Shown: positions 35,755 to 63,430 of the stretch, one piece after another
Position numbering within the stretch: position 1 is the stretch's first letter
How the letters are laid out: every line of letters begins with the position of its first letter
NCBI GenBank assembly: GCA_038087875.1
Contig: CM075978.1
Span: 170,004,001 to 170,068,000 of the forward strand
Length of the DNA stretch: 64,000 nt
Direction of reading: 5' to 3'
Source of the DNA: Malacoraja senta
Lineage: Eukaryota
Made by a program: the position numbers and the translations under genes
Notes under the pieces: generated by a model
The model's input: the letters and a program-made list of their open reading frames with translations, nothing else
Told to the model about the DNA's origin: nothing
The model's database searches: none

Positions 35755-36569
35755 TTGGGATTCTTTTTTTCTGTCTTTTTAAAATTTGTAGTCAGTTTTA
35801 AAAATTTGTTTTGGAGATTTCTTTAGCTTTTCTATGTGGGGGTGGGGGGTAGGGTAAGGGGGGAAACCGTTTCCCAGTCACTTCCTGGCGAGGACGCGAC
35901 TATTCTCTGAGCACCCCCCTCCTCGCGCCCTACCACCTGGATTGGAGCGGCCTTTCCTGCCGGGGACCCGGACCAGAGCTTCAGCAGCGGCGGCGCAGCG
36001 CTGGATTCACCGCGGAGCGGGCGATTGCTTACCTGGATCGCCGTTGAAGCTCCGGAGTGTTGGGTCTGCTGCTTGAACATCGGAGCTGTGGTTCGTAGAG
36101 CTTCCAGCGCAGGCGGCGCTGACTTCAACATCGCGGAGTCCTGGGGCTCTTTGCCGAGGGCCACCAGCGTTGAATCTCCGCCCAGCGCGGCCTGTGGACT
36201 TTGGGAGCCGCGGACTCCGGTAGGAAGTGGCCGATTCGGATGTCCAAGCCGCTGAGGATGTCCTCCAGTCCCGACGTCGGACTTCCATCACCCCGGCGAG
36301 CGGGCTTGAACATCGGGCCACCCGTAGCGGCGACAGCGGGGGGTTTAGGAGCCCCCCGACCACGGGAGGACAACAGAGGAGGACGACTGAATTTTGGAGC
36401 CTTCCCTCACAGTGGGAATCTTGATCCTGCTGTGTGGGGATGTCTGTGTTAAAAACTATCGTGTTCTGTGCTCTTTATTATTCGTATGGCTGTATGGTGA
36501 CCACACATTTCACTGTACCAACTGGTACATGTGACAAATAAATGTATCTTGTATCTTGTATCTTGTATC
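35755..36569 (+). mobile_element. CpG-rich non-coding retroposon, third subfamily
   Basis: T-rich tract, GGGGGAAAC, GC core, GCCTTCCCTCACAGTG hairpin, Rex1-like tail, (GTATCTT)n. Confidence 0.7.
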
Positions 36570-36641
36570 ACATGTGGGTTTGGCCTCTCTAAATAGCCCC
36601 TAGTGTGTAGAACAACCTCCACTTCATCCTGTCCATTTATT

Positions 36642-36952
36642 GGGCAGCACGGTGGCGCGGTGGTAGAGTTGCTGCCATACAGCGCCAGACACCCGGCTTC
36701 GATCCAGACTACGGGTGCTGTCTGTACGGAGTTTGTACGTTCTCCCTGTGACCGTGTGGGTTTTCCTCCGGGTGCTCCAGTACTCCAAAGATGTAGAGAT
36801 TTTTAGGTTAATCGGCAGATAAAATAGTTTAATTGTCCTTAGTGTGTAGGATAGTGCTAGTGTACGGGGTGATCCATGGTCGATGCGGACTCGGTGGGCC
36901 GAAGAGCCTGTTTCCGTGCTTTATCTCTGAGGTAAAGTAAAGTCTAAAGTAA
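36642..36952 (+). mobile_element. HE1/V-SINE tRNA-derived SINE, representative full copy; roughly 30 full or partial copies in the window, e.g. 1-225(-), 4467-4760(+), 5347-5622(+), 9305-9595(-), 11305-11597(-), 16545-16840(+), 19880-20186(+), 21220-21520(-), 24933-25240(+), 44370-44660(-), 48225-48525(-), 53760-54070(-), 58500-58795(+), 60595-60910(+), 63725-64000(+)
   Basis: tRNA-like head with A box (GGTGGCGCGGTGG) and B box (TTCGATCC), V-SINE core (GGAGTTTGTACGTTCTCCC...GTGGGTTT...CCGGGTGCTCC), CR1-like tail GGGCCGAAGGGCCTGTTTCC plus (TAAAC/G)n. Confidence 0.85.
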
Positions 36953-37260
36953 AGCACATGAGGGTTTGTAGGTTAATTGGTCTCTACATTACCCCTAGCA
37001 TGTGGAGCACCCTCTAAACCCATCCTATCCATATATCTGTCCAAATGTCTTTTAAAGTCGTAAATGTATCCATTATAATTTCCTCTGGCAGCTTATTTCA
37101 GATACAGACAATCCTCTTTTGACTGATAGTGGAAATGCAGGCCAGGAAAGTGTGGGTGAGCCATGGTGGGATCACATTGAATGGCAGAGGAAGTCCAAGA
37201 GGCCAGGGAGTCTGCATCTTCCCCTGTTTCTCACCTTCTTATTATGTCTCCCATTTCCAG

Positions 37261-37455
37261 TGCTCCAAGACCTGTGGCCGGGGGATGAGAAAGCGCAACG
37301 TCTACTGCAGAAGCACCAACCCCACGTCCAAACCGCACACCGTGCTGGATAGTCTGTGCATGCTGGACTCCAAGCCCAAGAGTCAGGAGATCTGTGTGGT
37401 GCGGAGGTGCCCGAAGAACGACCGATTACGATGGATCACGTCAGCATGGACAGAG
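37261..37455 (+). CDS. ADAMTS18: ADAMTS18-like TSP1 exon (CSKTCGRGMRKR...CPKNDRLRWITSAWTE)
   Basis: TTCCAG acceptor ending at 37260, GAG|GTCTGG donor at 37456, 195 nt, phase 0 to 0. CSKTCGRG and CPKNxRL motifs. Confidence 0.92.
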
Positions 37456-37912
37456 GTCTGGCAATTACTTAGTTTATTTTATTTTATTTTATTGTAATGT
37501 GTATAGTGACACATTTTTTTGCTGCTTGCTATCCAGTCATTGGAAAGTCTATACATGATTCCTAACAAGCCATCCACAGTGTACAGATACAGGATAAAGG
37601 ATTTAGTGCAAGATAAAGTCCGATTAAAGATAGTCCGAGTGTCTTCAATGAGGTAGATGGTAGCTCTCGTTGGTGATAGAATAGTTCAGTTGCCTGATAA
37701 CAGCTGGGAAGAAATTGAACCTGAATCTGGAGGTTAGTTTTCACACTTCTGTTCTTCTTGCCTGATCGAAGAGGCGATAAGTGCCTGAAGAAGGGTCTCG
37801 ACCAGAAACATCACCTATTCCTTCTCTCCAGAGATGCTACCTATCCAGCTAGCTTACTCCAGCATTTTGTGTCTATCTACGGGATAAACCAGCATCTACA
37901 GTTCCTTCCTTG

Positions 37913-38645
37913 ACCACCAGGGGCGCCACACGATTGGCAGCCCCGCCAACAGTCTATTTGTATTTTCGTCTTTTTTTTTATTATTAGTGTGTGTTGAAAG
38001 TTTGTGTAAATGTTCTCAGGTTTGTTTTATGTGGGGGGAGGGGGAAACTTTTTTTTTCAATTTCTTACCTTGCCAGAGATGCGATTAATTTTCGGATCGC
38101 AATCTCCGGTCGCTCTGCGGCCTACCATCGTTGAAGCTGGAGGCCTCCTCGGACTGACCTTGGGTCCCATCACGGGGCATGGACTTATCTCAGAGTTGAT
38201 CACTTGCCTGGGATCGCTCCAACAGCGGCCTGCGGACTTTACATCGGGATCTCGCAGCCTTGGGAGAGGGCGTGTATGTCGGAAGCTCCAACGTCACGGA
38301 AGGTTCGACCAGCCCCAACGCGGGGTTCGATCATCCGGCGCGGGCATCCGCCCGATGCAGGAGCTGATCGCCTCGGCGCGGAGGGCCTGCCGCCGGCTAC
38401 GGGAGTCAAGATCATCCCGTCAACAGAGGGCTCAAGGCACCCGACCGCAAGAGAGCAAAGGGAAGAGATTGAGCTTTTTTTTTTTGGCCTTCCATCACAG
38501 TGAGGAATGTGGAGTCACTGTGATGGATGTTTATGTTAAAATGTATTTCATGTGTTCCGTTTGTATGACTGACTTGGCAAATGAAATTCCTCGTATGTTG
38601 CAAAACATACTTGGCTAATAAAGTATTATTATTATCGTATTATTA
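37913..38645 (+). mobile_element. CpG-rich non-coding retroposon, same architecture as 62580; a 5'-truncated relative lies at about 57955-58280 (-)
   Basis: Same order of motifs; AATAAAG(TAT)n tail; inserted at the end of a Penelope arm. Confidence 0.7.
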
Positions 38646-39835
38646 CACATCTCAAAGCAGACCCTTACACATGGGCATCGGTTTCAGCGACTACTCTTTG
38701 ATATGGAAAAGAGAAAGGAACTTTTATATTTCCAAATTGGTACATTTTGTTGAAGTATTGTTCACAAACGAAAGAAGATAAAATTGTGGGAGAGAAATGG
38801 AGTGAATGTTTCGGGTTGAAGAACCTTCATCAGTAATGCATCACTACCTCCATATTAAGTGTTGACCAACTGTGATCAAAGACAAATGTCTAACCCCTCA
38901 CCTTTTTGCCTGCAAGGCATAATTATAATGCACAATGCTATAGAGAGGTTAGCGGAGTCAACCATTTAAGATTATCATTATATTGGATATTAAAAATAAA
39001 TTAGATATTCTCTTTGCTTTCACGGCAAATTTAATTAGCAAGGATCAGATGGAGAGGGCCGAGAGAATGAAAGTAATTTATATTTCTTGCTGGTGTGGTG
39101 GCAAGTCTGACATTGCTGACTTAACTCATTGAGTTGGCCATTTTCCTAGCTGTGCTCGGTTTAACTTGCACTGGATTACATTCACCTCAGTGGTGGGATG
39201 AGGAGGGTAAATGAGCAGGGCTATGGTCCTCTTTGGCAGCTTCTACACTGTCACACATTGGGGCAGCACAGTGGTGCAGTGGTAGAGTTGCTGCCTTACA
39301 GCGCCAGAGACCCGGGTTCTATTCTGACTACAATGATGCCATCCACACTGTACAGATAATGTTTAGTGTAAGATAAAGTCCGATTAATGATAATTCAAAG
39401 GTTTCCAATGAGATTGATGCTAGGTCAGGACTGCTGTCAAGCTGATGAGAGGACGGTTCAGTTGCCTGGTAACAGCTGGGAAGAAACAGTCCCTGAATCT
39501 GGAGGTCTGCGCTTTCAGACTTATGTACTTCTTGCCTGATGGGAGAGGGAAGGAGTGACCGGGTGAGACTGGTCCTTGTTTATGCTGCTGGCCTTGCCGA
39601 GGCAGCGTGAAGTGTGGAGGGAGTCAATGGAAGAGAGGGTGGTTTGTGTGATGGTCTGGGCTGCATCCACAACTCTCTACAGCTTCTTGGTTGGAGCTGT
39701 TCCCAAACCACTCCGTGATGCATCCCGATAAAATGCTTTCCACAGCGCATCTGTAGGAGTTGGTGAGAGTTTTTTTTCAGTTCTTTGCCACTACTTCTCT
39801 CGCATAAAACACTGCTTGTATTTCTCCTTGTACAG

Positions 39836-40060
39836 TGCTCAGTGTCCTGTGGTCCCGGCCTACAAAAACGAGAGCTAAAGTGCAGTGAGAAAAGTGTGTC
39901 CGGCAAGTACGTCCCTTTCCCCCAGCGGAGATGTCGCCATCTGCCCAAAGCGAAGGTTGATCTCGAACGAGCTTGTAACCTGGGCGCATGTCCCAATCCC
40001 GCCATGAACCAAATCCTCAACAACGCGGCACCAGCCTGGTATGCATCACCATGGCAACAG
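39836..40060 (+). CDS. ADAMTS18: ADAMTS18-like TSP1 exon (CSVSCGPGLQKRELKCSEK...WYASPWQQ)
   Basis: TACAG acceptor ending at 39835, CAG|GTAGGA donor at 40061, 225 nt, phase 0 to 0. Confidence 0.92.
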
Positions 40061-41132
40061 GTAGGATTATGATTCGGGTGTGGGATACGATACGATACGA
40101 TAGAACTTTATTTATCCCAGGAGGGAAATTGGTCTGCCTATAGTCATAAAACACAACAAGATAGAAACATAGAAAATAGGTGCAAAAGTAGGCCATTCGG
40201 CCCTTCGAGCCCGCACTGCCATTCAATATGATCCAAAATCAGTACCCTGTTCCTGCTTTTTTCCCATATCCCTTGATTCCGTTAGCTACATAAAGATAAG
40301 ATAACTGCTATCTTATAAGATAACAATAAGATACATGAAACATGAAATTAAAGTGACGAGTGGAAAGTCCAGGATTTGGGATGTGCAAAGTTTGGGGTAG
40401 CGGGGAGGTGGGGGGGGGGGGGGGGGGGGTTTAGGAGAAGGGGAGACAATCAACCCCACACCAGAAGGGGGAGGAGCTGTATAATTTGATAGCCACAGGG
40501 AAAAAAGGATCTCCTGTGGCGTTCTGTGCTGCATCTTGGTGGAACCAGTCTGTGGCTGAAGGTGCTCCTCAAGTTGACCAGTGTGTAATGCTGAGCAATT
40601 AGATGGTGTGGCACTGTTTATTCAGCCCCTTGTAACTGAATAGTGTTGTCATTTGCAGTAGATGGTGCTGGAGACTATTTACATTTTAGAAATGTAAAAC
40701 AAAGAACAGAACATGCCCTGAAGAAGCGCCCCAACCCAAAATGTCCCACCCATGTTGTCCAGAGATGCTGCCTGACCTACTGAATTACCCCAACACTTCG
40801 TGTCTATCTTTGACAAGAACAGACCCTTCGGCTCACAATATCTGCCCCAAACATGATGCCAATCGACATGAACATATTCCATATCAATCCATTCCCTGCC
40901 TATCCATGTGCCTTTCCAAAGTCTCTTAAACGCCAGTATCGCATCTGCCTTAACCAGCCCCCTGGCATCGTATTCCAGGCTCTCACTACTCTCTGTATAA
41001 TAGAAACTTGCTCTGCACATCTCCTTTAAACTTTACCCCTCTCACCTTAAGTGCCCTCTGATCACAATTTGAATAACTTCCCTTCAACAGTATACTTCAC
41101 TGCATATAAAGATATAAACAATATACTTGACT

Positions 41133-41432
41133 GAACCAGGGGCCACAGTTGAAGAATAATGGGTAGGCCATTTAGAACTGAGATGAGGAAAAACGTTTTC
41201 ACGCAGTGAGTTGTGAATTTGTGGAATTGTCTGCCTCAGGAGGCATTGGAGGCCGATTCACTGGATGCATTCAGACGAGAGCTAGATAGAGCTCTTAAGG
41301 CTTGCGTAATCAAGGAATATGGGGGGAAGGCAGGAACGGGGTACAGATTGTGGATGATCTGCCATGATCACATTGAATGGCGGTGCTGGCTCGAAGGGCC
41401 GAATTGCCTACTCCTGCACCTATTGTCTATGT
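41133..41432 (+). mobile_element. CR1-clade LINE 3' end
   Basis: Closely similar to 3057-3360. Confidence 0.85.
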
Positions 41433-42020
41433 ATCTATTTTTTCTTAGATGCAAGCCGATTATAGAATGGTAAAGCATGGCAATGAACTGCAAATAAGGG
41501 GATTCTTTAGCTAAAGGGCACAGGTTTAAGGTTAGAGGGGAAATAATTAAAGAAGCAACTTTTTCACATAGAGGGCAGTGGGTGCACGGGACAAGCTGCC
41601 AGAGGAGGTAGTTGACGCTGGTACAATAAAAACATTTAGTGTCACAGAGTCATACAGTGCAGAAACAATTCCTTCGGCCCAACTTGCCCATGCTGACCAA
41701 GATGCCTCTATGCTAGTCCCACCTGCCCGCATTTGCCTCACATCCCTCTAAACCTTTCCTATCCATGTACCTGACCAAATGTCTTTTAAATGTAGATGGG
41801 CTAACTTGGTAGAGTTGGGCCGAAGGGCCTGTTTCCGTGGTGTAAGACTTGATCGAGTCGAAGCATGTTGATGATTTTAATTTTGACGCTCCTATCATAT
41901 GGAAGATGAAAGGCTGTCTGTTTCGGTGTCACTGAGAAGGAAAAACAGACAAGAAGGGTGAAATTTAAAAAAAAAAGAAAAAAAAAGAAGGGTGAAATAA
42001 TTCCTTTCTTTCCCGTGCAG

Positions 42021-42165
42021 TGTACAGTCACGTGCGGAGGAGGAGTCCAGATCCGCACCATACACTGTCTACGACAGGGGAGACCCTCGGTGGGATGTCA
42101 CGGACACCAGAAACCAGCAGTGTCGAGAGCTTGCAATACAATCTTCTGTCCATCACCCAGGAAAG
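42021..42165 (+). CDS. ADAMTS18: ADAMTS18-like last TSP1 exon (CTVTCGGGVQIR...CNTIFCPSPRK)
   Basis: TGCAG acceptor ending at 42020, G|GTTAGT donor at 42166, 145 nt, phase 0 to 1. Confidence 0.93.
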
Positions 42166-42397
42166 GTTAGTACCCTCAGGTCTAGTCACCTCGATCTGCT
42201 TTGCAATGCTTTGAATGCAGAATTAACGATGGTGAATACAGGAGTGAGTGGGTGATAGAGTGGGTCTTTTACCCACGGTAGAGGAATCAAAAAACAGAAC
42301 AGTGGTTGAAGGTGAGAGGGGCAAGATTTAATATAAACTTGAAGGGAAACTTGTTCACTCTTGAGGGTGGTTGGTATAAGGAACATACTACCAGAGG

Positions 42398-42612
42398 TAG
42401 ACAAAAATGCTGGAGAAACTCAGCGGGTGAGACAGCATCCATGGAGAGAAGGAATATGTGACGTTTCGGGTCGAGACCCTTCTTCAGACTGAAGAAGGGT
42501 CTCGATCCAAAATGGCACCTATTCCTTCTCTCCATAGATGCTGCCGCACCCGCTGAGTTTCTCCAGCATTTTGTCTACCTTCGATTTTTCCGGCATCTGC
42601 AGTTCTTTCTTA
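42398..42612. mobile_element. Palindromic Penelope-derived mini-element with 16-bp TSD
   Basis: Two inverted arms meeting at CTTCTTCAGACTGAAGAAG; TSD AACATACTACCAGAGG at 42382-42397 and 42613-42628. Confidence 0.85.
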
Positions 42613-43044
42613 AACATACTACCAGAGGAGTTAATTGAGGCGGATATCAATTCAGCATTTAAAAGACATTTGGGCAGGTACATGGAGAGGAAAGATTTAA
42701 AGGGGTATGGGGCAAATGCGGTTAGGTGGGACTTGCTTAGATTGGAGATGGTGGTCGGCACGGACGAATTGAGCCGGTCTCCTAACTCAGCTCCCCTGTA
42801 GTCCTTCTATCAGGGAGGTTGTGGGGCTGATTTGGACATGGGTTAGTGGTTCTTTTTTCACCCCTTGTAAAGATTGACTTACCTAGTAGGTATCTTGCTG
42901 ACATCTGGTCGGACAAGAAGGACAAATGATGAAGAACCAGTTGGTTCTACTAATACAAGGACTCTGAAACATGAAGGGCAAGGGACCCTTTGGCTCTTGT
43001 GGCTTTTAACCTTTGCTGATGTGTATTTTCTTCTCCCATCGTAG

Positions 43045-43160
43045 ATCTCAACTGTGTCGACTACTTTAGTTGGTGCCACCTGGTTCCACAACATGGGCTC
43101 TGCAGCCACAAGTTCTACGGCAAGCAATGCTGCAAGTCCTGCAGCAAAATCAACCGATAG
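43045..43160 (+). CDS. ADAMTS18: ADAMTS18-like terminal coding exon, PLAC domain (DLNCVDYFSWCHLVPQHGLCSHKFYGKQCCKSCSKINR*)
   Basis: TAG acceptor ending at 43044; the phase-1 junction makes GAT (Asp). Six-cysteine PLAC motif; TAG stop at 43158-43160 followed at once by TGA. This frame is not in the ORF track. Confidence 0.93.
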
Positions 43161-45434: not shown

Positions 45435-45665
45435 GGTACACAAAAATGCTGGAGAAACTCAGCGGGTGCAGCAGCATCTATGGAGCGAAGGAAATAGGCA
45501 ACGTTTCGGGCCGAAACCCTTCTTCAGACTGATAGGGGGTGGGGAGAAGAAAGGAAAAAAGGAAAAAGGCGGAGGAGGAGCCTGAGGGCTGGGGGAAGGG
45601 AGGAGACAACCAGAGGGCTGATGAAGGGGAGGGGACAGCAGGGGCTAGCAGAATTGGGAGAATTC
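45435..45665 (-). mobile_element. Single Penelope terminal-repeat insertion with 14-bp TSD
   Basis: TSD AACCAGTACCTTTA at 45421-45434 and 45666-45679; hammerhead-like core at 45499-45527 on the minus strand. Confidence 0.82.
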
Positions 45666-46260: not shown

Positions 46261-46440
46261 TTTATTAATAAATTCATGTAGTGGGTTTTCCGATGTACAA
46301 GCAAAGCAGGAATGGAAGATTATTGTGATGGTTACATTATTGAGAGAGGCTGTAGTTTGCTCTTTGTGTGTGCATTAATACTGTAAGTATTATTTAAATT
46401 TTTGTAAATCTTTTTGTAATAAAATTCATTCACACGTTAA
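46261..46440 (+). terminator. Probable polyadenylation region of the ADAMTS gene (implies a 3' UTR of about 3.3 kb)
   Basis: AATAAA at 46267-46272 and 46418-46423 in AT-rich unique sequence with upstream TGTA motifs. More proximal AATAAA at 44053 and 44306 are alternatives. Confidence 0.5.
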
Positions 46441-51894: not shown

Positions 51895-52460
51895 TTTTTA
51901 TTTTATTTTATTTATCATTACACTTATAGGGCGCCTTTCAAAGACTCTCAAGGACGCCTTGCAGATAAGCAGATTACAAAACATATAAGCAGAATAAAAA
52001 ATTAAAAAATAGTAGGGACATCAACAACATCACAATACACAAATTAAGGACAGAATTCATTTCAAAGGGACAAAAAAGAAAATCAGAAACACAATTTGAG
52101 GCGAGAGCAGCGGCAGCTAAACCGTGCCAGCGTCCACTCTCCCCTCCGACCGCCATCTTGAACACAGACTAACAAAGACACAGCACACAAAAATCACCCC
52201 CCCACAATGAATTACCACTGTGGGGGAAGGCACAGTGTCCAGTCCCCAACCCCAGTTCTCCCAAAGACGGCATATTGAGGCCTCCACAGTTGCCTCTACG
52301 GAGGCCCGATGTTCCTGGCCGTTCTCGCCGGGTGCAGTTGTCCCGGCGTCGGGAGAGTCCTTGCAGCGGCTGGGACGGCTGGAACGGCCGATCTCCTATT
52401 GGAGTCCGTGGCACCTGAAGCCAACAAGGCCACGCCGATTACCCCTCAGGCTCCTGTGCT
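51895..52460 (-). mobile_element. CpG-rich retroposon relative with an L2-like 3' tail
   Basis: Core similar to 36290-36440; minus-strand tail AAGGCGTCCTTGAG...GAAAGGCGCCCTATA...AATAAAATAAA. Confidence 0.6.
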
Positions 52461-54334
52461 TCAGGCTGCCCAACCTCAGGCCCTCAGGTGATATGCTCGT
52501 AAATCTCTGCACTCTTTCCACCTTAGCAGCATTGTTCCTATGGCAGGGTGACTCACAAATACTATTACAGCTGATTCCCCTACTCTGGGTAAAAGGCTCT
52601 TGCTTAATATAATCCTAATTTAACTGCACCATTTTAATCCTAGCTTGCTTTAATCCTCTTGCTTTTGCTTATTCTAAAAATTATATTTCTGGTAGTGAGT
52701 CTAATGTGTTGTTGAAGTGGGCTTGTAATGTGAAAGGTTTCCTGTAATGATATCAAGGAGATGAGTAGACCCAAGCGCTGAGAGACATAGGAGTCGTGAG
52801 TAAATTAAACTCAAAAACAGCTAGAATCCTGATTAAAGAATACAAGGGTCAGCATGAGAAAATCAAAGACAGAGACAAAATATCTGCACTGAAATAAGTG
52901 AATTAATAGGTAACAGAACATATGTAGGCACAAAAAACTGGAGTAATTCAGCTGGCCAGGCAGCATCTCTGGAGAAAAGGAATAGGTGACGTTTAAGATC
53001 AAGACCGTTCTTCAGCTGACTAAAATGATAACGATCTGATCTGAACTGAACTGTCCTCCCACCAACTGGAGAGCGGTCCTGACCTCCCATCTACCTTATT
53101 GGAGACCATCGAACTATCTTTAATCTGACTTTAACTTGCACTCAACGCTATACCCATTATCCTGTATCTGTGCATTGTGGACAGCTTGATTGTAATCATG
53201 TATAGACTTTTCGTTGACAGGATAGCACGCAACAAAAAGCTTTTCATTGAATGTCGGTACACGTGGCAATAAACTAAACTAAACTACAAAACTAAAATAA
53301 TTAAAGATAATTGAACAAAAGACAACTCAGTCTATGCCATCCTCAGTAATCAGTGGACGGATCAGCAGACATTGTGACAGGTTCCCGATGAGGTTGAAGA
53401 TCTTCACTAATGGCCTGCAAAAACCAAACTAAAGGAGGAACTCTGCAGGTCAGGCAGCATCAGTGGAGGGAATGGACAGAAAATGTTTTAGGTCAGAACC
53501 TTTTCTTCAGACTGAGCCACAGAAGATAGCACAGGTTAGGGTAAAGTGGAACAGGGATGAATCTTTTGACCCAATGGGTCTTTGGAATGAGGAACTTAGT
53601 GCCTGAAGAGGTGCTGGAAGAGACACACTCACAATATTTAACAATTATCCTAGTCGAGCTAGGCATAGAAAGGTAAAACAATTGCCTGTAAATAGGAGAC
53701 TCCTAGATGGACACTTGATAGGGAGTGTGACATAGTGGAGAGAAGGGCTTTTGTGTGCTTTTAGTTCAGTATAGTTTAGTTCAGTGATACTGCACGGAAA
53801 CAGGCCGTTCGGCTCACCAATTCCACGCCGACAGCAATCATCCCGCACACTACCCTATACACACACTACGGACAATTTTACAACTTGCCGAAGCCAATTA
53901 TCCTGCAAACCTGTGCATCTTTGGAGTGTGGGAGGAAGCCGGAGCACCCGGACAAAACCCACGCGGGTTTCGGGGAGAAAGTACAAACTTCTTAGAGACA
54001 GCACCTGTAGTCAGGCTTGAACCCAAGTCATTGGCGCTGTAAGGCAGCAACTCCACCGCTGCGCCACCATGTGCTGTATGACTATACAGTAGCTGTGTTT
54101 TGGTTGATATGATAAGGAATGTTACAAATTATAGGATTATATTCATCTATTGATCATTTGAAGAAAGGTCCTGACCCAAAATGTCATCTGTCCATTGTCT
54201 CCACAGATGCTGCCTGATCTGCTGAGTTCTTCCAGCACTTACATAGAACATAGGACAAAGACAGCACAGCACAGGAACAGGCCCTTCAGCCCACAATGTT
54301 TGTGCCATACATGATGCCTAGTAGAACCTTCTTC

Positions 54335-55320
54335 AAATGACACTAAGCTGGGTGGCAGTGTCAACTGTGAGGAGCATGCTATGAGGATGCAGGGTGACTT
54401 GGACAGGTTGGGTGAGTGGGCAGATGCATGGCAGATGGAGTTTAATGTGGATAAATATGAGGTTATTGACTTTGGTGGCAAGAACAGGAAGGCAGATTAT
54501 TATCTGAATGGTGTCATTGGGAAAAGGGAAAGTACAATGACATCTGGGTGTCCTTGTACATCAGTCACTGAAAGTAAGCATGCAGGTACAGCAGGCAGTG
54601 AAGAAAGCTGATGGGCTGTTGTCCTTCATAAAAAGAGGAGTTGAGTATAGGAGCAAAGAGGTCCTTCTGCAGATGTACAGGGCCTTGGTGAGACCACACC
54701 TGGAGTATTGTGTGCAGTTTTGGTCTCCAAATATGAGGAAGGACATTCTTGCTATTGAGGGAGTGCAGCTTAGGTTCACAAGGTTAATTCCCGGGATGGC
54801 GGGACTGTCATATGTTGAAGGAATGGAGCGTCTGGGCTTATATACACTGGAATTTAGAAGTATGACAATAGACAATAGACAATAGGTGCAAGAGTAGGCC
54901 ATTCGGCCCTTCGAGCCAGCACCGCCATGAGAGGGGATCTTATTGAACCATATAAGATTATTAAGGGGTTGGACACGCAATAGGCAGAAAACATGTTCCC
55001 GATGTTGGGGGAGTCCAGAACCAGGGGCCAAATTTAAGAATAAGGGGTAGGCCATTTAGAACGGAGATGAGGAAAAAAAAATTCACCCAGAGAGTTGTGA
55101 ATCTGTGGAATTCTCTGCCTTAGAAGACAGTGGAGGCCGATTCTCTGGATGCTTTCAAGAGAGAGTTAGATAGAGCTCTAAAAGATAGTGGAGTCAAGGG
55201 ATATGGGAAGAAGGCAGGAATGAGGTACTGATTGTGGATGATCAGCCATAATCACAGTGAAGGGCAGTGCTGGCTCGAAGGGCTGAATGGCCTACTCATG
55301 CACCTATTGTCTATTGTCTA
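54335..55320 (+). mobile_element. CR1-clade (HER1-like) LINE 3' kilobase, degenerate RT C-terminus
   Basis: DTKLGG...MQGDLDRLGEWADAWQMEFNVDK and YRALVRPHLEYCVQFWSP motifs; CTATTGT tail. Confidence 0.92.
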
Positions 55321-58300
55321 CTGACCGATCTCATCTGCCTGTACATGAACCTCTATTCCACTGCACTTCCTATCTAAAAGACTCTTATACACCAGTATCG
55401 TATTTGCCTCCACCACCACCACTGGCGATCTGTTCCAGGCCTACCCTGCACATCTCCATTAAACTTTTCCTCTCTCACCTTACATCCATGCCCTCTAGTA
55501 TTGGATATTTCCACCCTGGGGAAAGAAGTTCTAACCGTCTACCCTATCTATGCCTCTAATAATTTTATATAATACTATCACCCCTCACCTCAACCTCCGA
55601 AGTCTGTTCATCCTCTCCCTGTAGCTGAAACCCTCGAATCCAGGTAAGATTCTGGTAAACCTCCTCTGCACCCTCTCCAGAGCTTCCACATCTTTTCTGT
55701 AATGGAGCGATCTGAGCTGCACTTTGTGCGTTGCCCAGGATTCCAGCATTTGCAGTTTCTTGTGCACTCGTTCGTTCGCTCTGCCCGGTTAAAGGTAACC
55801 ATGGAAACACAGGCTTTGGTTCTGACTTTTCCGCTCTCTTGACAACCTGTGGAGTGTTTCATTTCCAATTCTCTCGTTGACTTTGTGAGCAACCAGACAT
55901 CCGACATTCCGCCTGACCTGTTGAGTATTTTCAGCAGTTTCTGCTCGATTTCAGATTTTCAAATATCTGCTGGTTCTCACCTTTTATGTTTGAGTTTATG
56001 AAGATTAAAAGGAATCCTGTGATGTGACAGTGCAACTCCTGGAGTTATAGAGATAGTTATTGGCTTATTTCTGTCAGATGTACTAAGATGCAGTGAACAA
56101 TTTTAGTTCTGGGTGCTATCCAGGTACGTAAATCATATCATTCACGAGTACGTCAGTGCAAAAGAGAAAATAAGCTGAGTTCAGGATACAGTGTTACAGC
56201 CGCAGGGAAAGTGCAGATTATAAAAAAGTGCAAGTGCCACTAAAAGGTAGATTGGAAGATCGAGAATTCATCCGTGGCATACGAGAAGCCCGTTCGAAAG
56301 TCTGAGAAAAGATGGCCTTGAATCTGGTGGAAGGCTCTCCCGACAGGACAGGGGAGAAGATGATATGACCGGGGTGTGTGGTCTTTGATTATGTTGGCTG
56401 CTTTCCTGAGGCATCGTAAAATGGAGATGGAGTCGATGAAGGGGGGTTTTGTATGATGGACTGGACTGTGTCCGCAACTCTCTGTTGTGTACCTAATCTC
56501 CCATCCCCAAGTGATGAAGAGTAGAACAATCTCCAAATTGCGGTGGGTGATGAAGGAAGACTGTTGAGTGCCTTGTACTGCTAACCATTGACGCTGTTCT
56601 GGGCAATCAATGTTGGATGTGCTGATCTCCAAGGAAAGCAATCCTTCCCTTGACTGATAGACACAAAATGCTGGAGTAACTCAGCGGGTCAGGCAGTGTC
56701 TCTGGAGAACATGGATAGGTGACGTTTCAGGTCGGGACCCGAAAACATCACCTGTTCATTTTCTCCAGAGACGCTGCCTGAGCCGCTGAGTTACTCCAGC
56801 ATTTTGTGTCTATCTTTGGTATAAACCAGCATCTACAGTTCTTTTTTATTACTTCCCTCAACTACTCAACCCCTCTGCAATGTTTTAATTTCTTTTTCCC
56901 ACACAACAGCTCCTTGGGGTGAGATCTATTTAAGTCCCAGCCAACAAACGTCTAAGGCATTGGCAGCTCCAATGGCTGAGTTGCAGGAAAGAATAGAATG
57001 TCTGGATGGAGGACACCTGTACTATGTTCATGCTGGGCCCTGATACAGGTAGGGTGGAGGATCCCTCACCACTGACGCTAGCCAACGTAAACAAGACAGC
57101 AGATCAATGCATCCATTGTACCCTCACCAACCTCCAACCCGTGAAGTTCCAGGTCATTGGAGCAGATGTGTGAAAGGGCAAGAGCTAAACAATAAAGCAA
57201 AGCAATCCCTTTAGAAACGAACAGGCCAATGCCGGCATTAGGGGGTATTACCTTCAGGGTGAGGTTGGACAGACTTGGATAATTTCCTCTGGAACACCAG
57301 AGGTTGTGGGGAAACCTGATGGTATATGTATGTACTGTACATAAGTACTGGATATGGAATTATGAGAGACATACATAGGGTAAAAGGTCAGAAGCCTTTT
57401 TCCCAGGATATAAAAATCAAATATTAGAGCACATAACTTTATGGTGAGAGGGGCTAAGTTTCTAGGATATTTTTTTACACAGTGGGTGGTGGGTACCTGG
57501 CTTGTACGGCTGAGACAGATATGATAGTGGCATTGAAGAGCCATTTGGAAAGGCACATGGATATGCAGGGAATGGAGGGATATAGATCATGTGCAGGCAG
57601 ATGTTGACCTTGGCATCATGTGCAGCACAGACGATGTGGAGCGAAGGGCCTGTCCTTGTGCTGTACTATTCCATGTTCTATGTTCCAACTCAAATTCGCA
57701 TGGCCATGGATCGTTTGAAATGTCATAACATTTAAGAGTCATTAAGCTGCAGGAAAGATTCACCAGGGTGTTTCCAGGACTTGAGGGTTTGAGTTATATG
57801 GAGAGACTGTGTACTCTCAGTTGCAACCACAGTACTGTGTTGTACCAATAATACAGTAGGTTTAAGGTGAGGGGGGAAAGATGTAGTAGGAACCTCAGGG
57901 GTAATATTTTTGGTGGATGGTGTAAGGGTGGTGGGTGTATGGTGGTATGATTGTATGGATCAAGCAGCCTGCCACACAATCATACCAATAAAAAGCAACA
58001 AAACACACAAAATACATTTAACATGAACACCCACCACAGTGACTCCTCCACATTCCTCACTGTAATGGAAGGCCAAAAAAAAGTTCAATCTCTTCCCTTC
58101 TTTGTCCTCCTGCGGTCGGGGGCCTCGAGCCTTCTGTTGACGGGACGATCTCAGGCCCTCCGCATCGGGGCAATCAAGCTCCCGCATCGGGGGGGATCTC
58201 AGCTCCCCTGCACCAGATGATCGGACCCCGAGTTGGGGCTGGTCGAACCTCTTGCGACTTTGGAGCTTCCCGACATCAGTATCACTGATTATAGTTAGAT

Positions 58301-59192
58301 ATCCTATACTCAAATCAGGGCTAACATACTACTTATCTTCCTCATTGCTTGCTTTACCTGTATGTTTGCAGTCAGTTACTGGTGTTTAAGAACAATCAAG
58401 CCTCTTCGTGCATCTACTCTTCACAATCTCACGCTGGTTAAGTTATGCACTGTCTTTCTGTTATCCATACCGGTAGATAACTTCACATTATCCACAATGG
58501 ACAGCACAGTGACGCAGCAGTAGAGTTGCTGCCTTACAGTGCCAGAGACCCGGGTTCAATTCTGACTAGGTACCGTCTGTCCGGAGTTTGTACCTTCTCC
58601 CTATGACCGCATAGGTTTTCACCGGGTGCTCCGGTTTCCTCCCAAATTCCAAAGAGGTACAGGTTTCTAGGTTAATTGGCCGCCGTAAATTGTCCCTAGT
58701 GTGTAGGATAGAACTAGTATTACAGGGTGATTGTTGGTCGACTTTAACTCAATGGACCGAAGGGCCTGTTTCCACGCTGTATCTTTAAGCTAAAATTTAT
58801 TGCATCTGCTGTGTGTCAGATTAATTGCTCAGTCTGTCAACGACACCTTGAATCTTCTTTGCGTTTTCTTCATATCTCATGATCCCACTTACTCAGCGCC
58901 TTCATGAATCACGAGTTAGAGGTGGGTTTGTAGACGTAACAGATGGAGACAGCGTAATCTGAACACGTTAGAGCATACACACTTGCCTATAAGGATGTGG
59001 GATTGAGGCCCGAATCTGTTAATGTCATGTTGAGATTAATGTCAAGGCCACCTACAGATGTCATAGCTACGATCCAAGGCATTGCCACTTCCAACCCAAC
59101 AATCTTCCCAGAACTATCACTTCTCTGAACCTGGACCTGTAAATTTCATTGTTTGACAATTGGTGGCCATGCCATTCAGTCCCAAGAACTCA

Positions 59193-59540
59193 CCCCCTCT
59201 CTCTCGCTCTCTCTCTTTCATTCTCTGTGCCATTCCACCATTCCCCCTCGCTCACTCTCCCTCCATCTCATTCCTCCTCTCACTCTTTCTCTCATTCCTC
59301 CCTCTCTCTCTCATTCCCCCTCTGTCTCTCTCATTCCCCCCAACTCTCTCATCCCCTCCCTTTCATTCTCCCCTCTCTCTCCCCCTCATCCGCCCCCTCT
59401 CCCCCCCTCTCTCTCTCTCTCTCTCTCATTCCCTCTTTCTCTCTCACTCCCCCTTCTCTCTTTCTCATTCCCCCTCTTACACTTTCATTCCCTCTCTCTC
59501 GCTCTCTCCACTCCTCTCTGTCATTCTCCCCATCTCAGCT
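59193..59540. repeat. Polypyrimidine low-complexity array of (CTCTCATTCCC)-like units
   Basis: Direct inspection; a mirror GA-rich tract lies at 61633-61720. Confidence 0.9.
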
Positions 59541-60910
59541 TTTTCGGGTCAACCTTTGCCCATCCGGCCTGATCTCTCTCTGGCCTTGTGTCGTTAGGTA
59601 AACTATATTTCAGTGTTGCATGTTAAATGCACTGGTGCAGTCCACTGCATTTTTGCAGGCGCCATATCAATGCAAGGAGTTGTTGTTATTGTTGTTGTTG
59701 GTTGATAGAAACCATGACCATTCCTTCAGTTGCAGCGCCCCCTGCTGTGAATCACCGGCCTGGCAGGGAGTGCCTCTCATTGACTCACCCACTGAGTCAG
59801 CTGAACAGCCAGCGTGTCAAAGGGCAATTGTCCCATTACTCAATTGATTTAAGAGGAAGGATTAATTGTATTGCCAGTGCCAAACTAAATAGAAATTATT
59901 CATGTCATTAGCAGTTTGCATCTGAAAGTATGGGCTTTATTAAATTTGCAAGAATTGAAATCAGCATTAAATCTGCTTCCTTGTATCTGTCATTATGGTT
60001 AATTACTTCCACGTTCTCACAGACAAGGCCTAAAACTGCAGGGTCCTCTGTGGCTTTTATTCAAGTATCTATATTTTCCCCAAGGGAAATCAATTAGGGC
60101 GGCACAGCGGGTAGAGCTGCTGCCTCACAGATGCAGAGACTGGGTTCGATTCCGACCTTGGGTGCTGCCGGTTGTGTGGAGTTTTAACGTTCTCCCTGTG
60201 AACGTGTGGGTTTCCTCCAGGTGCTCTGGTTTCTTCCCACATCCCAAAGATGTGCGGGTTTGTAGGTTAATTGGTTCCTGATGTGCAGGAAAGCGCTGGG
60301 GTAACTTAGCGGGTCAGGCAGCATCTCTGGAGAAAAAGGATGTGTGATTTTTTGGGTTGGAGCATGTCTGAAGAAGGTCTCCAACCCGAAAACCTAAGTT
60401 ACTCCAGCACTTTGTGTCTATCTTCGGTATATACCAGCATCTTCAGTTCTTTCCTACACATGATGTGTTGGGAGTGGATGTGAAAATGGAATAACCTGTA
60501 ACTCGTGTGAATGGGTCTTCGATTGTCCACATAGACTCAGTGGGCTGAAGCACCTGCTTCAATACTGTAATGTAAACTAAATGAATTAACAGGAGGCGGC
60601 ACAGTGGAGCAGCGGTCGAGTTGCTCCCGAACAGCTTCAGAGACCTAGTTTTGATTCTGATTATGGATAATGCCTGTAAGGAGTGTGTACGTTCTCCCTG
60701 TGACCACATGGGTTTTCTCTAGGTGCTCTGGTTTCCTCCCACATTCCAAAGAAGTACAGGTTTGTAGATCTGTTGGCTTCAGTGAAAAAAAATTGTAAAT
60801 TGTCCCCAGTGTGTAGGATAGCGTTAGTGTAGGGGGTGATCGCTGGTCTGCGCAGACTCGGTGGGCTGAGGGCCTGTTTCCACGCTGTATCTCTAAAGTA
60901 TAAAGTCTAA

Positions 60911-61367
60911 AGGGCCTGTCCCATGGGCATGCGACTCCATGCGGCAAGCGTGACCTAACCGCAAGCGGGGGCCGCGCGGGGGTCGAGTGATCCCCGTACA
61001 GGGCCGGTCCCACCAGCATGCGACTGCATGCGGCAAGCGCTACCAAATCGGAAGCGGGGGCCGCGCGGAGGTCGAGTGACGTCAAGACAGTGCGTACGGC
61101 GGCGAGGCGGTATGCACGGCCGTTGAGGCGGTGCGCACGGCCGTCGATGCAGCTGCGGGGCGGCAGGCCGTTGCCGCACGGAATTTTTGATCAGTGTCAG
61201 TTTTTCGGAGCCCCGCGCGATGTCGGGACCAGCTCCGCACAACTCCATACGGCTCCAGCGATCGAAGTGGGACCGGCCCCGCGACCCCCGCGCGGCCCCC
61301 GCACGGTCCCCGCTTGCGGTTAGGTCGCGCTTGCCACATGGAGTCGCATGCCCGTGGGACAGGCCCT
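60911..61367. mobile_element. PIF/Harbinger-type MITE, 457 bp
   Basis: Long TIRs starting AGGGCCTGTCCCA and ending TGGGACAGGCCCT, TAA 3-bp TSD, GC-rich interior; inserted in an HE1 SINE tail. Confidence 0.88.
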
Positions 61368-62579
61368 TAAATCTACAACGTTCTGTAATTTGTTACATTC
61401 TTGGGCACAGCTGTTCCCAAACCAAGCTGTGATGCAACCCTATTGTATGCTCAAGGCATTGGAGAATGACAATTGTTATCCATTTTACCTGCAATGGATC
61501 CATTGAAGGCTGTACAGTTCATGCACCATCATATTTTAATAATAAACTATGTTAGATGCCTGCAGCAAATCATTGAACATTTCTCATAAAATCCAATTGT
61601 TTTCCTTGTTCCAGCAACACAGTTTGGATAAAAGAGCGAGAGAGAGGGAGGGGGAGAGGGAGAGGGAGGGGGAGGCGGAGGGGGAGGGAGAGGGAGAGGG
61701 AGAGGGAGAGAGAGAGAGACACACCTGAACTCATTCACACGGAGAGATTAATAGATTGTTGCCCCTTTTAACATTGAGTCTAAATTGTTTAATTGATCAT
61801 GCTTGTCTGAATTGGATTTATTAGCTATGTACACATTGGAAGATTCATTAGAATTTCATTGTTGCCTCAAATTTGACCTTCTCATTTAATCTTAGTCAAT
61901 TCTAAATGAGAAGAGCATGCATTAAAACCTTCAGCCCTTGGTGGTAAAGTGACAGGAATCCTGGAATACTTACGATGAAGCACAGATGCATTATCCTCAC
62001 ACACGTCGTCTTCGCTTGAGTCAGACTGAAATATTCAATGACAGATTTCTGTGGCAGAACTTGCTTTTGATTCCACACTTATCCAGTCATAGTGTCATAG
62101 AGTCATACAGCACGGAAACAGGCCGTTCAACTTGTCCATGCCAACCAACATGCCTCATTTACGCTAGTCCCATTTGAGTGAAAAAGTTGCCCCTCAAGTT
62201 CCTATTAAATATTTCCTCTCCCTTAAGCCTATGTCCTCTTGTTCTTGATTCCCCTACCCTGGGTAAAATACTTTGTGCATTCACCCTATCTATTCCTCTC
62301 ATAATCTCATGCACTTTCCATGACTTCCACAGTATTGTTCCATTGTTTTGAAGTGCCTGCCGTAATTCATATGGATGCTAATGCATTTAGTAAGGCAGGG
62401 ACCACAGGTGCACTACGGACTATAAGTTCGGTGCAAAAGTTTAGTTTAATTTAGGTTAGTTTATTATTATCACTAACGAGGTACAATGAAAAGCTTTTTT
62501 TTGCGCGTGCTATCCAGTAATAGAAAAGACTATATATGATTACAATCAAGTCATCCACAGTGTACAGATACAGGATAGA

Positions 62580-63430
62580 AGTGGCGGCGCCTAACGGCAG
62601 CGGCTCGACTGCAGTCCGTCTGTCTTTTTTTTATTTTTGTCTAGTTAAATGTAGTTGTTTGTGTTTTTTTTGTATTGTTTTTAACTGTGTATATGTGGGG
62701 AGCGGGGGCGGGGGAAACTTAAAAAAATCTCTTCCCTGTATGGAGGACCCGACCTTTCTCTGTCGGGTCTCCGTTGTCGTTGGGGCCTAGCACCGTGGAG
62801 AGGCCTCCAACCGGAACGACCTGGGGCTCGAGTCGCGGAGCCTGCGGACTACTCACCATCGTGGAGCTGGCCGAGTTCGGAGTGTGGAGAGCTGCGGTGA
62901 CGCGCGGCTGTGACCCGACCCCGGAGATTCGGAGGCTCCAGCCGCAGGTCTGGTGGACGGTGACATCGGGGAGCTCGCGGGTCCCTGGTGGGAGACCGCT
63001 TTTCGGGGCTCCCGCAACGGCAACTTCTCCCGCCCGAGTTGCGGGGTTGAAGATGACCTGGAGCTGGGTCTAACATCGCCCCGCGCGGCTTTAATGGCCG
63101 CGGGACTTGCTAGCGCTACCGGGGGCTCCAACATCCAGACCCGGAGGGCGGCCTTGCATCGCCCGGCGCGGCTTTAATGGCCGCGGGACTTATTTTCCAT
63201 CGCCCGCCGGGGGCTCTGACTCTGACATCGGGAGGAGAATGGGGAGTGCGGGCGAGAGATACGATTTTGCCTTCCATCACAGCGAGGAGGAGATTCGCTG
63301 TGATGGATGTTTGTGTAAATTGTGTTGTGTCTTGGTTCTTTTTACTTGTTTGTATGACTGCAGAAACCAAATTTCGTTTCAACTTCATTTGAGGTTCAAA
63401 TGACAATAAGTGGTATTGTATTGTATTGTA
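62580..63430 (+). mobile_element. CpG-rich non-coding retroposon, unnamed family, apparently full-length
   Basis: GGCGCC..GGCAGC head, T-rich tract, G-run, hairpin, GC-rich core, 13-bp hairpin, Rex1-like tail and (GTATT)n; interrupts a Rex1 tail fragment. Confidence 0.7.

What the first reader, a model, noticed from the sequence alone, without database searches (positions are those of the whole stretch)
35755..63430. Family of CpG-rich, non-tRNA retroposons held together by a covarying RNA hairpin
Seen: six elements (35755-36569+, 37913-38645+, 62580-63430+, 57955-58280-, 51895-52460-, 33340-33580-) align poorly overall, yet the longer copies share one architecture. The order is: GGCGCC..GGCAGC head (in the two copies with an intact 5' end), T/GT-rich tract, GGGGGAAAC, a 5' hairpin (38072-38110; 62742-62772), a GC core with recurring ACATCG..GAGC and GCCTGYGGACT modules, then GCCTTCC plus a hairpin. 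That stem is TCCATCACAGTGA/TCACTGTGATGGA at 38491-38527 and TCCATCACAGCGA/TCGCTGTGATGGA at 63273-63307, a T-A to C-G compensatory change with a different loop. Variants at 36403-36440, 52198-52228, 58031-58068 and 33455-33483 keep pairing with different sequence. No credible ORF and no Pol III A/B boxes were found. Inference: a non-autonomous LINE parasite whose RNA structure is selected, possibly undescribed in chondrichthyans; function of the hairpin unknown.
Basis: partly seen in the sequence, partly recalled or inferred. Interest (0 to 1): 0.75.

Follow-up and report, generated by a model that had tools for sequence, protein, structure and literature searches.

The report
Abundant non-coding LINE-dependent skate retroposons
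Six copies of a very abundant, protein-less jumping element sit in the introns of a skate ADAMTS-like gene; they borrow the 3' end of a LINE to get copied and keep a base-paired RNA hairpin intact through compensating mutations, which makes them a familiar kind of genomic parasite in an unusual, CpG-rich, non-SINE form.

Summary
The six stretches are homologous (nhmmer E 1e-10 to 1e-27). A 13-bp hairpin follows GCCTTCC in all six. In the six-copy alignment, 76 of 77 cells pair, 4 of 13 pairs changed on both sides, and there are 11 G-U cells against 0 A-C, which points to sense-strand RNA.

It is a LINE-dependent, non-coding retroposon family. Copies A and F end in the same stem-loop plus short-repeat tail as two truncated LINE 3' ends in this window. 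Copy C is an insertion with matching empty sites in paralogous repeat copies. Copy F has a 6-bp target duplication.

There is no tRNA, Rfam or Pfam match. T8-T11 runs about 50 nt from the 5' end rule out Pol III, so these are not SINEs in the strict sense. The cores are CpG-island grade (observed/expected 0.93-0.99 against 0.46 for the rest of the window). More than 25,000 contig pieces match in each of two organisms.

Caveats:
- There are only six copies.
- The showcased B/C "compensatory" change is two CpG decays.
- The hairpin's role is inferred.
- Dfam and Repbase could not be searched.

The scan has noted this family before in other windows; one follow-up (s1-213396) reached the same reading.

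The parts
37913..38645 (+). Copy B, full length (733 nt): GC head, T/GT-rich tract, GGGGGAAAC, CpG-rich core, proximal hairpin, GT-rich spacer, distal stem-loop, AATAAA, (TATTA)n-like tail
62578..63433 (+). Copy C, full length (856 nt), inserted into another repeat; ends in (GTATT)n
   Evidence: Boundaries from empty-site joints 62577->63434 seen in contigs of two organisms
35755..36569 (+). Copy A, 5'-truncated inside the T-rich tract; ends in (TGTATCT)n
33339..33580 (-). Copy F, strongly 5'-truncated, inserted in a tRNA-type SINE with a 6-bp target duplication (ACCCGG / CCCCGG); closest to A (76% in the core)
57996..58280 (-). Copy D, truncated at both ends; closest to B (79% core, 93% hairpin block)
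51895..52500 (-). Copy E: core and hairpin homologous to A (52435-52170), followed by about 270 nt unrelated to the other copies with its own stem-loop and (AAAAT)n tail
38491..38527 (+). Proximal hairpin of B (13 bp, 11-nt loop)
63273..63307 (+). Proximal hairpin of C (13-14 bp, 7-9-nt loop)
36403..36440 (+). Proximal hairpin of A (15 bp with a 1x1 internal loop or bulge)
58031..58068 (-). Proximal hairpin of D (13 bp, three U-G pairs)
52198..52228 (-). Proximal hairpin of E (12-14 bp, 4-nt loop); found by a covariance model built without E
33455..33483 (-). Proximal hairpin of F (9 bp; inner part of the 3' arm deleted)
36510..36534 (+). Distal LINE-type stem-loop of A, directly before ACAAATAAA and the repeat tail
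33363..33387 (-). Distal LINE-type stem-loop of F (U-A to C-G change relative to A)
38593..38610 (+). Distal stem-loop of B (different sequence, same position before AATAAAG)
63371..63407 (+). Distal stem-loop of C (different sequence, same position)
15528..16021 (-). 5'-truncated LINE copy: C-terminal end of the reverse-transcriptase ORF, about 230-nt 3' UTR, and the same terminal stem-loop as A and F, followed by an (AAACC)-like tail. Likely partner family of A and F
17420..17510 (+). Second, very short copy of the same LINE 3' end
38072..38110 (+). 5' hairpin of B
62742..62772 (+). 5' hairpin of C

Best explanation
These are copies of a very abundant, ORF-less, non-autonomous retroposon family of a skate, 0.73-0.86 kb when full length, copied by the reverse transcriptase of stringent-type LINEs (stem-loop plus short-repeat tail).

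Shown:
- The copies are homologous.
- They are insertions.
- They end in a stem-loop, an A-rich motif and a microsatellite; for the A/F subfamily this end is the same as that of LINE 3' ends in the window.
- They carry no small-RNA head.
- They carry long T runs that would stop RNA polymerase III about 50-60 nt from the 5' end.
- Their cores are CpG-island grade.

Inferred:
- They are transcribed by RNA polymerase II from a defined start at the GC-rich head. B and C begin at the same homologous position.
- The CpG-rich body may act as an internal promoter.
- The distal stem-loop is the element bound by the LINE ORF2 protein for target-primed reverse transcription.

The proximal hairpin after GCCTTCC belongs to the body, not to the borrowed tail. 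It is kept in all subfamilies, including E with its unrelated 3' end. It lies about 100 nt from the 3' end in A, B, C and F, and it is maintained as sense-strand RNA pairing. My best guess, about 45% of the weight, is that it is a cis-acting RNA element the retroposon needs for its own propagation. It could act as a second protein-docking stem in the retrotransposition RNP, or as a stable clamp that keeps the GC-rich core from pairing into the tail so the distal stem-loop stays exposed.
For: - Homology.
- Hairpin in all six copies.
- Pair counts: 98.7% of cells paired, 4 of 13 pairs changed on both sides, and the covariation score is reached by 4 of 500 shuffles. Slid controls pair in 31-58% of cells.
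- The same stem is predicted de novo by RNAalifold.
- A model built without E finds E at E = 2e-4.
- Cell types: 65 Watson-Crick, 11 G-U and 0 A-C.
- The hairpin block is the best conserved part, at 59-93% identity against 41-55% for the core between subfamilies.
- The LINE tail is shared by A, F and two LINE ends.
- The LINE fragment's relatives carry RVT_1 upstream of the matched C-terminus.
- Empty-site joints exist for C, and more than 25,000 contig pieces at 80% identity or better match in each of two organisms.
- 31-mers of C are held by runs under about 10 organism labels.
- T8-T11 runs start at positions 48-59 of B and C.
- No tRNA, Rfam or Pfam match.
- CpG observed/expected is 0.93-0.99 in the cores against 0.46 elsewhere.
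- ORF2 proteins of stringent LINEs bind the 3' tail stem-loop (PMC4176376).
Against: - There are only six copies, falling into about four lineages ({A,F}, {B,D}, C, E). The shuffle control does not correct for relatedness, and alignment A7 was fitted to the structure.
- The B/C double change is two CpG decays.
- No partner LINE for the B, C or E tails is present in the window.
- No transcript start, strand or length could be shown. All runs laid were contigs, the 'RNA?' labels are guesses, and the copies sit in introns.
- The whole-element fold z-scores are not strand-specific.
- The function of the proximal hairpin is untested.
Confidence: 0.7

Rival explanations
1. Bipartite, internally deleted LINE. 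The element is the 5' UTR plus the 3' UTR of a CR1-group LINE (L2, CR1 or Rex1) that lost its ORFs. The proximal hairpin would be part of that LINE's own untranslated region, not a feature specific to the retroposon. This overlaps with the best explanation on mobilisation and differs on origin.
For: - Pol II-type features, no small-RNA head, a defined 5' end and an ORF-less body.
- Bipartite ORF-less non-autonomous LINEs are a known kind (PMC5786205).
- Rex1 coverage is highest in rays, and Rex1 has a conserved 3' UTR followed by short repeats (PMC13343379; PMC6274825).
Against: - The one LINE 3' UTR available here (15528-15790) shares only the last roughly 35 nt with A and F and has no GCCTTCC hairpin.
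- The body persists with at least two unrelated 3' ends, E against the rest.
- Such ORF-less bipartite elements were reported only for RTE, Ingi, Vingi and R2.
- No full-length LINE was available for comparing 5' UTRs.
Confidence: 0.25
2. The proximal hairpin is a fossil of an earlier LINE tail (stem-loop followed by a degenerate GT-rich repeat). It was kept by descent after new tails were added downstream and has no present function.
For: - The 60 nt after the hairpin are GT-rich and look like a decayed short repeat.
- E shows that new 3' ends can be added behind the hairpin.
Against: - A, B, C and F share the segment downstream of the hairpin (GTATGRCTG ... GGCAAAT ... ATTTC), so that segment predates their split. 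The both-sided changes that distinguish them arose afterwards, while the hairpin was already internal.
- 76 of 77 cells still pair although the loops differ in length and sequence (4-14 nt).
Confidence: 0.15
3. The palindrome acts at the DNA level, as a protein-binding inverted repeat or cruciform. For example, it contains the heptamer CACAGTG and its complement, like a recombination-signal heptamer pair.
For: The two arms contain CACAG[T/C]G and its reverse complement in most copies. The whole-element fold z-score is as low on the antisense strand of B as on the sense strand.
Against: - 11 G-U (G-T) cells against 0 A-C cells means pairing is kept on one strand only.
- The 3'-arm heptamer is not conserved (CGCTGTG, TGCTGTG, CATTGTG).
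- No nonamer-like partner was seen.
- A heptamer alone is expected by chance every 16 kb.
Confidence: 0.04
4. Unrelated GC-rich sequences with chance hairpins; not a real family.
For: Core identity between subfamilies is only 41-55%. Short inverted repeats are not rare in the window (24 pairs).
Against: nhmmer E-values reach 1e-27 and 1e-46. The signature motif occurs only in the six copies. Tens of thousands of matching contig pieces exist in two organisms.
Confidence: 0.01

Closest known systems
SINE-LINE pairs with a shared 3' tail (eel UnaSINE1/UnaL2; elasmobranch HE1/HER1; SacSINE1 and CmiSINE with L2-2_CM)
   Same: A non-autonomous element ends in the stem-loop and short-repeat tail of a stringent LINE and is presumably recognised through it (PMC4176376; PMC5499810). 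Tails are exchanged between lineages, and copies are 5'-truncated.
   Different: No tRNA, 5S or 7SL head and no A/B boxes. Length is 0.73-0.86 kb rather than 0.1-0.5 kb. T8-T11 runs near the 5' end would terminate Pol III. The body is CpG-island grade.
Bipartite ORF-less non-autonomous LINEs (Kojima 2018, PMC5786205)
   Same: Protein-less, presumably Pol II-transcribed, with a defined 5' end and a LINE 3' end; can exchange tails.
   Different: Derivation of the 5' part from a LINE 5' UTR is untested here. The class was reported only for the RTE, Ingi, Vingi and R2 clades, whereas these tails are of the stem-loop plus microsatellite type typical of the CR1 group.
SVA elements of hominids
   Same: Non-coding, GC/CpG-rich, LINE-mobilised composite retroposon without a Pol III head. 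The body grows by internal tandem duplication; C has an 83-bp duplication at 85% identity.
   Different: SVA uses the relaxed, poly(A)-dependent L1 pathway and is built from Alu-like, VNTR and SINE-R parts. There is no sequence relation.
Highly conserved domains of SINE bodies (CORE, V, Deu, Nin, Ceph)
   Same: A central block is retained while heads, cores and tails diverge or are exchanged. Its function is debated: LINE interaction, recombination hot spot or host function (PMC5499810).
   Different: Here the conserved unit is a hairpin kept by compensatory change, not a conserved primary sequence. Similarity to the known domains could not be tested, because no reference sequences were at hand.

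Membership tests
SINE (SINEBase sense: Pol III-transcribed, small-RNA-derived head) | Head derived from tRNA, 5S or 7SL RNA, with an internal Pol III promoter (A and B boxes) | tested here: not met
   ARAGORN found 0 genes. Rfam gave no hit at gathering or at E<=5. Only isolated one-mismatch box-like matches, none as a correctly spaced pair near the 5' end.
SINE (SINEBase sense: Pol III-transcribed, small-RNA-derived head) | Transcript can be completed by Pol III (no internal T-run terminators); length about 80-500 nt | tested here: not met
   T8-T11 runs start at positions 48-59 of the full-length copies B and C. Their lengths are 733 and 856 nt.
LINE-dependent non-autonomous retroposon, stringent type | 3' end shared with an autonomous LINE of the same genome | tested here: met
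   A and F share about 35 nt (stem-loop plus ACAA(A)TAA) with LINE 3' ends at 15528-15575 and 17452-17500. The first of these follows the end of an RT ORF whose relatives carry RVT_1. No partner for the B, C or E tails is present in the window.
LINE-dependent non-autonomous retroposon, stringent type | Terminal stem-loop followed by short tandem repeats | tested here: met
   Distal stem-loops are present in A, F, B, C and E. Tails are (TGTATCT)n, (GTATT)n, a TTGACT repeat, a TATTA-like repeat and (AAAAT)n.
LINE-dependent non-autonomous retroposon, stringent type | Insertions with variable 5' truncation and empty sites or target duplications; no coding capacity | tested here: met
   Empty-site joints for C. 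F has a 6-bp duplication inside a SINE. A, D and F are 5'-truncated. No conserved ORF and no Pfam match.
Bipartite non-autonomous LINE | 5' part identical to the 5' end or UTR of the parent LINE | not testable with these tools
Dfam and Repbase were not available.
Structured RNA element under selection (proximal hairpin) | Pairing kept by changes on both sides, more than controls; strand-specific wobble pattern | tested here: met
   4 of 13 pairs changed on both sides and 98.7% of cells pair. The covariation score is reached by 4 of 500 shuffles; slid controls pair in 31-58% of cells. 11 G-U against 0 A-C cells. Power is limited to six copies, and the alignment was fitted to the structure.
Any Rfam family | Covariance-model match | tested here: not met
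   the best chance-level hits are at E 0.17-2.8, far below the gathering scores.

The most novel reading that the evidence does not exclude
A distinct class of Pol II-type, ORF-less retroposons partnered with CR1-group LINEs. Its identity is defined by a body-borne, covarying RNA hairpin that survives repeated tail swaps, and it has seeded tens of thousands of CpG-island-grade sequences across skate genomes. The hairpin would be a new kind of conserved retroposon domain, conserved as structure rather than sequence, with a specific protein partner. The CpG-rich bodies might stay unmethylated and act as promoters.
Probability: 0.25. Interest if true: 0.65.

Novelty: new variant of a known kind. 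Interest (0 to 1): 0.42.

Why it matters
- **Conserved domains in retroposons.** Why non-autonomous retroposons keep internal conserved domains is a long-standing open question. Here the conserved unit is a simple hairpin with visible compensatory changes, in a family that has several tails. It can therefore be tested directly with stem-disrupting and stem-restoring mutants in a LINE retrotransposition assay.
- **Range of ORF-less non-autonomous elements.** The family would extend ORF-less, non-Pol III non-autonomous elements to LINEs with stem-loop and microsatellite tails.
- **CpG content of skate genomes.** The cores have CpG observed/expected near 1, and matching contig pieces number in the tens of thousands. 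The family may therefore contribute a large share of the CpG-rich sequence in skate genomes. That matters for CpG-island calling, methylation studies and repeat masking in these assemblies.

Tried and rejected
- **More copies for a larger covariation test, part 1.** A scan of metagenome contigs for the 20-nt hairpin signature gave six hits, all chance matches in GC-rich bacterial contigs without the hairpin.
- **More copies, part 2.** The word search with B's 202-aa ORF gave one Logan protein, P0001, which is another copy read as an ORF.
- **Reads.** Read laying gives per-column variants only. 63297 G>A, the 3'-arm CpG, is seen in about 60% of depth, but its partner column was not among the rows shown. 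No linkage could be read from the table.
- **Coding capacity.** B's ORF and P0001 have no Pfam family.
- **Small-RNA origin.** Rfam at permissive thresholds and ARAGORN found nothing.
- **E as a template-switch chimera.** I tested whether E carries a second element's head after the hairpin. Local alignment scores against the heads of B and C were within the shuffled range, so the idea is dropped.
- **5' hairpin as a family feature.** It is present in B and C and not conserved in A.
- **Whole-element fold z-scores.** B+ gave -1.75, C+ gave -3.86 and B- gave -3.39. They are not strand-specific and rest on 20 shuffles, so they are uninformative.
- **Other CpG-rich patches.** The patches at 6.0-6.6 kb and 60.7-61.4 kb are unrelated terminal-inverted-repeat elements.
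- **LINE clade.** Pfam found nothing in the 90-aa fragment and the ESM Atlas gave only weak leads. The clade of the partner (L2, CR1 or Rex1) stays open.
- **Literature.** A full-text search for four signature strings returned no paper.

Full report
**Setting**

The window lies in an intron-rich ADAMTS-like gene on the + strand. Pfam finds ADAMTS_spacer1 at 248-706 and a TSP1_ADAMTS repeat in the ORF at 29614-30333. An exon at about 37260-37456 also reads like a TSP1 repeat but was not scanned. Earlier notes of this scan call the genome a skate; I did not verify the species. The window is crowded with interspersed repeats.

Yes.
- blastn and nhmmer show that the six stretches are homologous. 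A, B and C match over their whole lengths (E 1e-16 to 1e-22). A-F gives 8e-27, B-D gives 1.5e-46 and A-E gives 5.5e-17.
- They fall into about four lineages: {A,F}, {B,D}, C and E. Core identity is 76-79% within the pairs and only 41-55% between lineages.
- The 75-column block around the hairpin is the best conserved part, at 59-93% identity.
- The signature CTTCCNNCACAGYG occurs in exactly these six places, against 0.54 expected.
- GCCTGYGGACT and GGGGGAAAC occur only in the three long copies.
- The stated hairpin coordinates are correct.

**Anatomy of a full-length copy (B, 733 nt; C, 856 nt)**

Reading 5' to 3':
1. A GC-rich head of about 35 nt that itself folds into a small hairpin.
2. A T/GT-rich tract of about 100 nt with T8-T9 runs.
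3. G runs ending in GGGGGAAAC.
4. A 5' hairpin, present in B and C and not conserved in A.
5. A 420-530-nt core with GC 0.60-0.66 and CpG observed/expected 0.93-0.99. The rest of the window is at 0.46.
6. The proximal hairpin, directly after GCCTTCC.
7. About 60 nt of GT-rich spacer.
8. A distal stem-loop, an A-rich motif (AATAAA in A, B and F) and a short tandem repeat.

The core contains recurring (A/C)CATCG modules and internal duplications. C has an 83-bp duplication at 85% identity.

B and C begin at the same homologous position. C's ends are fixed by contigs of paralogous copies of the host repeat, which join 62577 directly to 63434. F sits inside a tRNA-type SINE, flanked by ACCCGG and CCCCGG. 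A, D and F are 5'-truncated. D also lacks its 3' end.

**The proximal hairpin**

- Each copy folds into it on its own, at -17 to -24 kcal/mol and z -1.9 to -5.0.
- It persists as a separate local hairpin in the whole-element folds of B and C.
- A covariance model built from five copies finds the sixth, E, at E = 2e-4.
- On the resulting six-row alignment, 76 of 77 cells pair. Five pairs never vary, four vary on one side, and four have changes on both sides: A-U/C-G; U-A/U-G/C-G; U-A/U-G/C-G; and A-U/G-U/G-C.
- The covariation score and the paired fraction are each reached by 4 of 500 column shuffles. Sliding the 3' partners by 1-3 columns drops pairing to 31-58%.
- RNAalifold predicts the same 13 pairs de novo.
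- The cells are 65 Watson-Crick, 11 G-U, one G-A and no A-C. A duplex-level or antisense constraint would give A-C as often as G-U, so the pairing is kept on the sense strand.
- The loop varies from 4 to 14 nt.

Four caveats apply:
- Six copies in about four lineages is a small sample.
- The shuffle control ignores relatedness.
- The alignment was fitted to the structure.
Read laying shows the A variant at 63297 in about 60% of family depth.

The transversion-type and non-CpG double changes in A, E and F carry more weight.

**The LINE link**

In A and F, the last roughly 35 nt are a stem-loop of the form TTTCACTGYACC..GGTRCATGTGA followed by CAAATAA. Two other places in the window carry the same sequence, 15528-15575 (-) and 17452-17500 (+).

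The first of these lies about 230 nt downstream of the stop of an ORF fragment ending ...NSFFPSVIRLLN. That 90-aa fragment has 2190 relatives in the representative library. In P0081, RVT_1 and PF09004 precede the matched C-terminus. The fragment is therefore the 3' end of a 5'-truncated non-LTR retrotransposon.

The LINE 3' UTR has no GCCTTCC hairpin. Beyond the terminal stem-loop it shares nothing with the retroposons. B and C have different distal stem-loops at the same position, and E has a third type behind an unrelated 270-nt segment. Their partners are not in the window.

ORF2 proteins of stringent LINEs bind the stem-loop of the 3' tail (PMC4176376). This is the established mechanism I infer for the distal hairpin.

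**Transcription**

Nothing points to Pol III:
- ARAGORN finds no tRNA.
- Rfam finds no family, even at E<=5.
- There is no properly placed A/B-box pair.
- T8-T11 runs start 48-59 nt from the 5' end. By established knowledge these terminate Pol III.

Pol II transcription from the head is the inference. It was not shown. All four runs laid were contigs, the 'RNA?' labels are guesses, and the elements are intronic.

B's 202-aa ORF is not coding. It is broken in A and C, it lacks any Pfam family, and its single relative, P0001, is another copy.

**Abundance and spread**

At 80% identity or better, 25,503 contig pieces in run X1 and 32,080 in run X3 (a different organism label) lay on the 1051-base stretch around C. 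Some belong to the flanking repeat. Several thousand pieces are at 99% identity or better. 31-mers of C are held by runs under about ten organism labels in 12 studies. The family is therefore very abundant, recently active and shared by related species.

**Mechanism and rivals**

Best reading: a Pol II-type non-coding retroposon whose exchangeable distal stem-loop and repeat tail recruit a LINE reverse transcriptase. Its body carries a proximal hairpin that is maintained as RNA because active source copies need it.

Timing supports this. A, B, C and F share the spacer downstream of the hairpin, yet they differ by compensated changes in the stem. The selection therefore acted while the hairpin was already internal, which argues against a mere fossil tail.

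What the hairpin does is inference. I put about 45% on a role in forming the retrotransposition RNP or in keeping the tail accessible. I put about 25% on RNA stability, processing or export, and the rest on no function or a DNA-level role.

A bipartite-LINE origin of the head and core remains open, at about 25%. It could not be tested without full-length LINEs.

**Comparison with what is known**

The element works like a SINE with a LINE-derived tail, but it fails the defining features of a SINE. It resembles the bipartite ORF-less non-autonomous LINEs of Kojima (PMC5786205). Those were reported only for RTE, Ingi, Vingi and R2. It also resembles SVA in being a GC-rich, internally duplicating, LINE-mobilised non-coding element. 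The conserved hairpin block parallels the 'highly conserved domains' of SINE bodies, whose function is still debated (PMC5499810).

I therefore rate it a new variant of a known kind. Whether it has already been described is open, because Dfam and Repbase could not be searched. A full-text search for four signature strings found no paper.

**Earlier notes**

The scan has noted this family repeatedly in other windows. One follow-up, s1-213396, independently reached the same reading. That is not independent evidence.

Noticed in passing
window 60905-61370: CpG-rich element (GC 0.64-0.68, CpG observed/expected 1.1-1.2) bounded by roughly 60-nt terminal inverted repeats, with an internal 89-bp tandem duplication. 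It looks like a MITE-type DNA transposon inserted right after a tRNA-type SINE. It is unrelated to the retroposon family.
   Followed up: partly
window 6100-6640 (-): Second CpG-rich element with terminal inverted repeats (GGGTTGCCAAC ... GTTGGCAACCC). Its 209-aa ORF (5906-6535) has no Pfam match.
   Followed up: partly
window 42404-42572: Large near-perfect palindrome: two 84-nt arms, 90% complementary, 1 nt apart. A perfect 19-nt-arm palindrome lies at 19164-19202.
   Followed up: no
window 36640-36950, 60600-60905, and 33280-33338 with 33581-33650: Copies of a tRNA-headed SINE with a (TAAAG/GTAAA)n-type tail. ARAGORN and Rfam call no tRNA in them. The excess of A-box and B-box pattern matches in the window may stem from such copies, which I did not check hit by hit. 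F is inserted into one of these copies.
   Followed up: partly
window 51895-52170 (-): The 3' part of copy E starts with CAAGATGGCGG (YY1-site-like). It then runs through a T-rich stretch to a stem-loop (GGCGTCCTT...AAGGCGCC) and an (AAAAT)n tail. This tail type is different from the other copies, and its partner is unknown. It has been noted separately as s1-181395.
   Followed up: partly
proteins P0039 and P0008: Public predicted proteins that match the LINE C-terminal fragment are sometimes fused to host-type domains: AIG1 GTPase plus a piece of RVT_1 in P0039, and PRDM PR domains in P0008. These are probably gene-model artefacts that swallowed LINE fragments.
   Followed up: no
window 38496-38502, 38516-38522 and the homologous places in the other copies: The proximal stem contains the heptamer CACAGTG and its complement CACTGTG, the same letters as a V(D)J recombination-signal heptamer. 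No nonamer was seen, and the 3'-arm heptamer is not conserved. It is most likely coincidence.
   Followed up: partly
window 248-706, 29614-30333, 37260-37456: Exons of an ADAMTS-like host gene on the + strand: Pfam finds the spacer domain in the first and a TSP1 repeat in the second; the third reads like a TSP1 repeat by eye only. A, B and C are in sense orientation in its introns. A and B carry AATAAA near their 3' ends.
   Followed up: partly
window 35859-35867, 38030-38048, 62695-62718: Three or four G runs directly before GGGGGAAAC in A, B and C could form a G-quadruplex at the boundary between the T-rich tract and the core.
   Followed up: no
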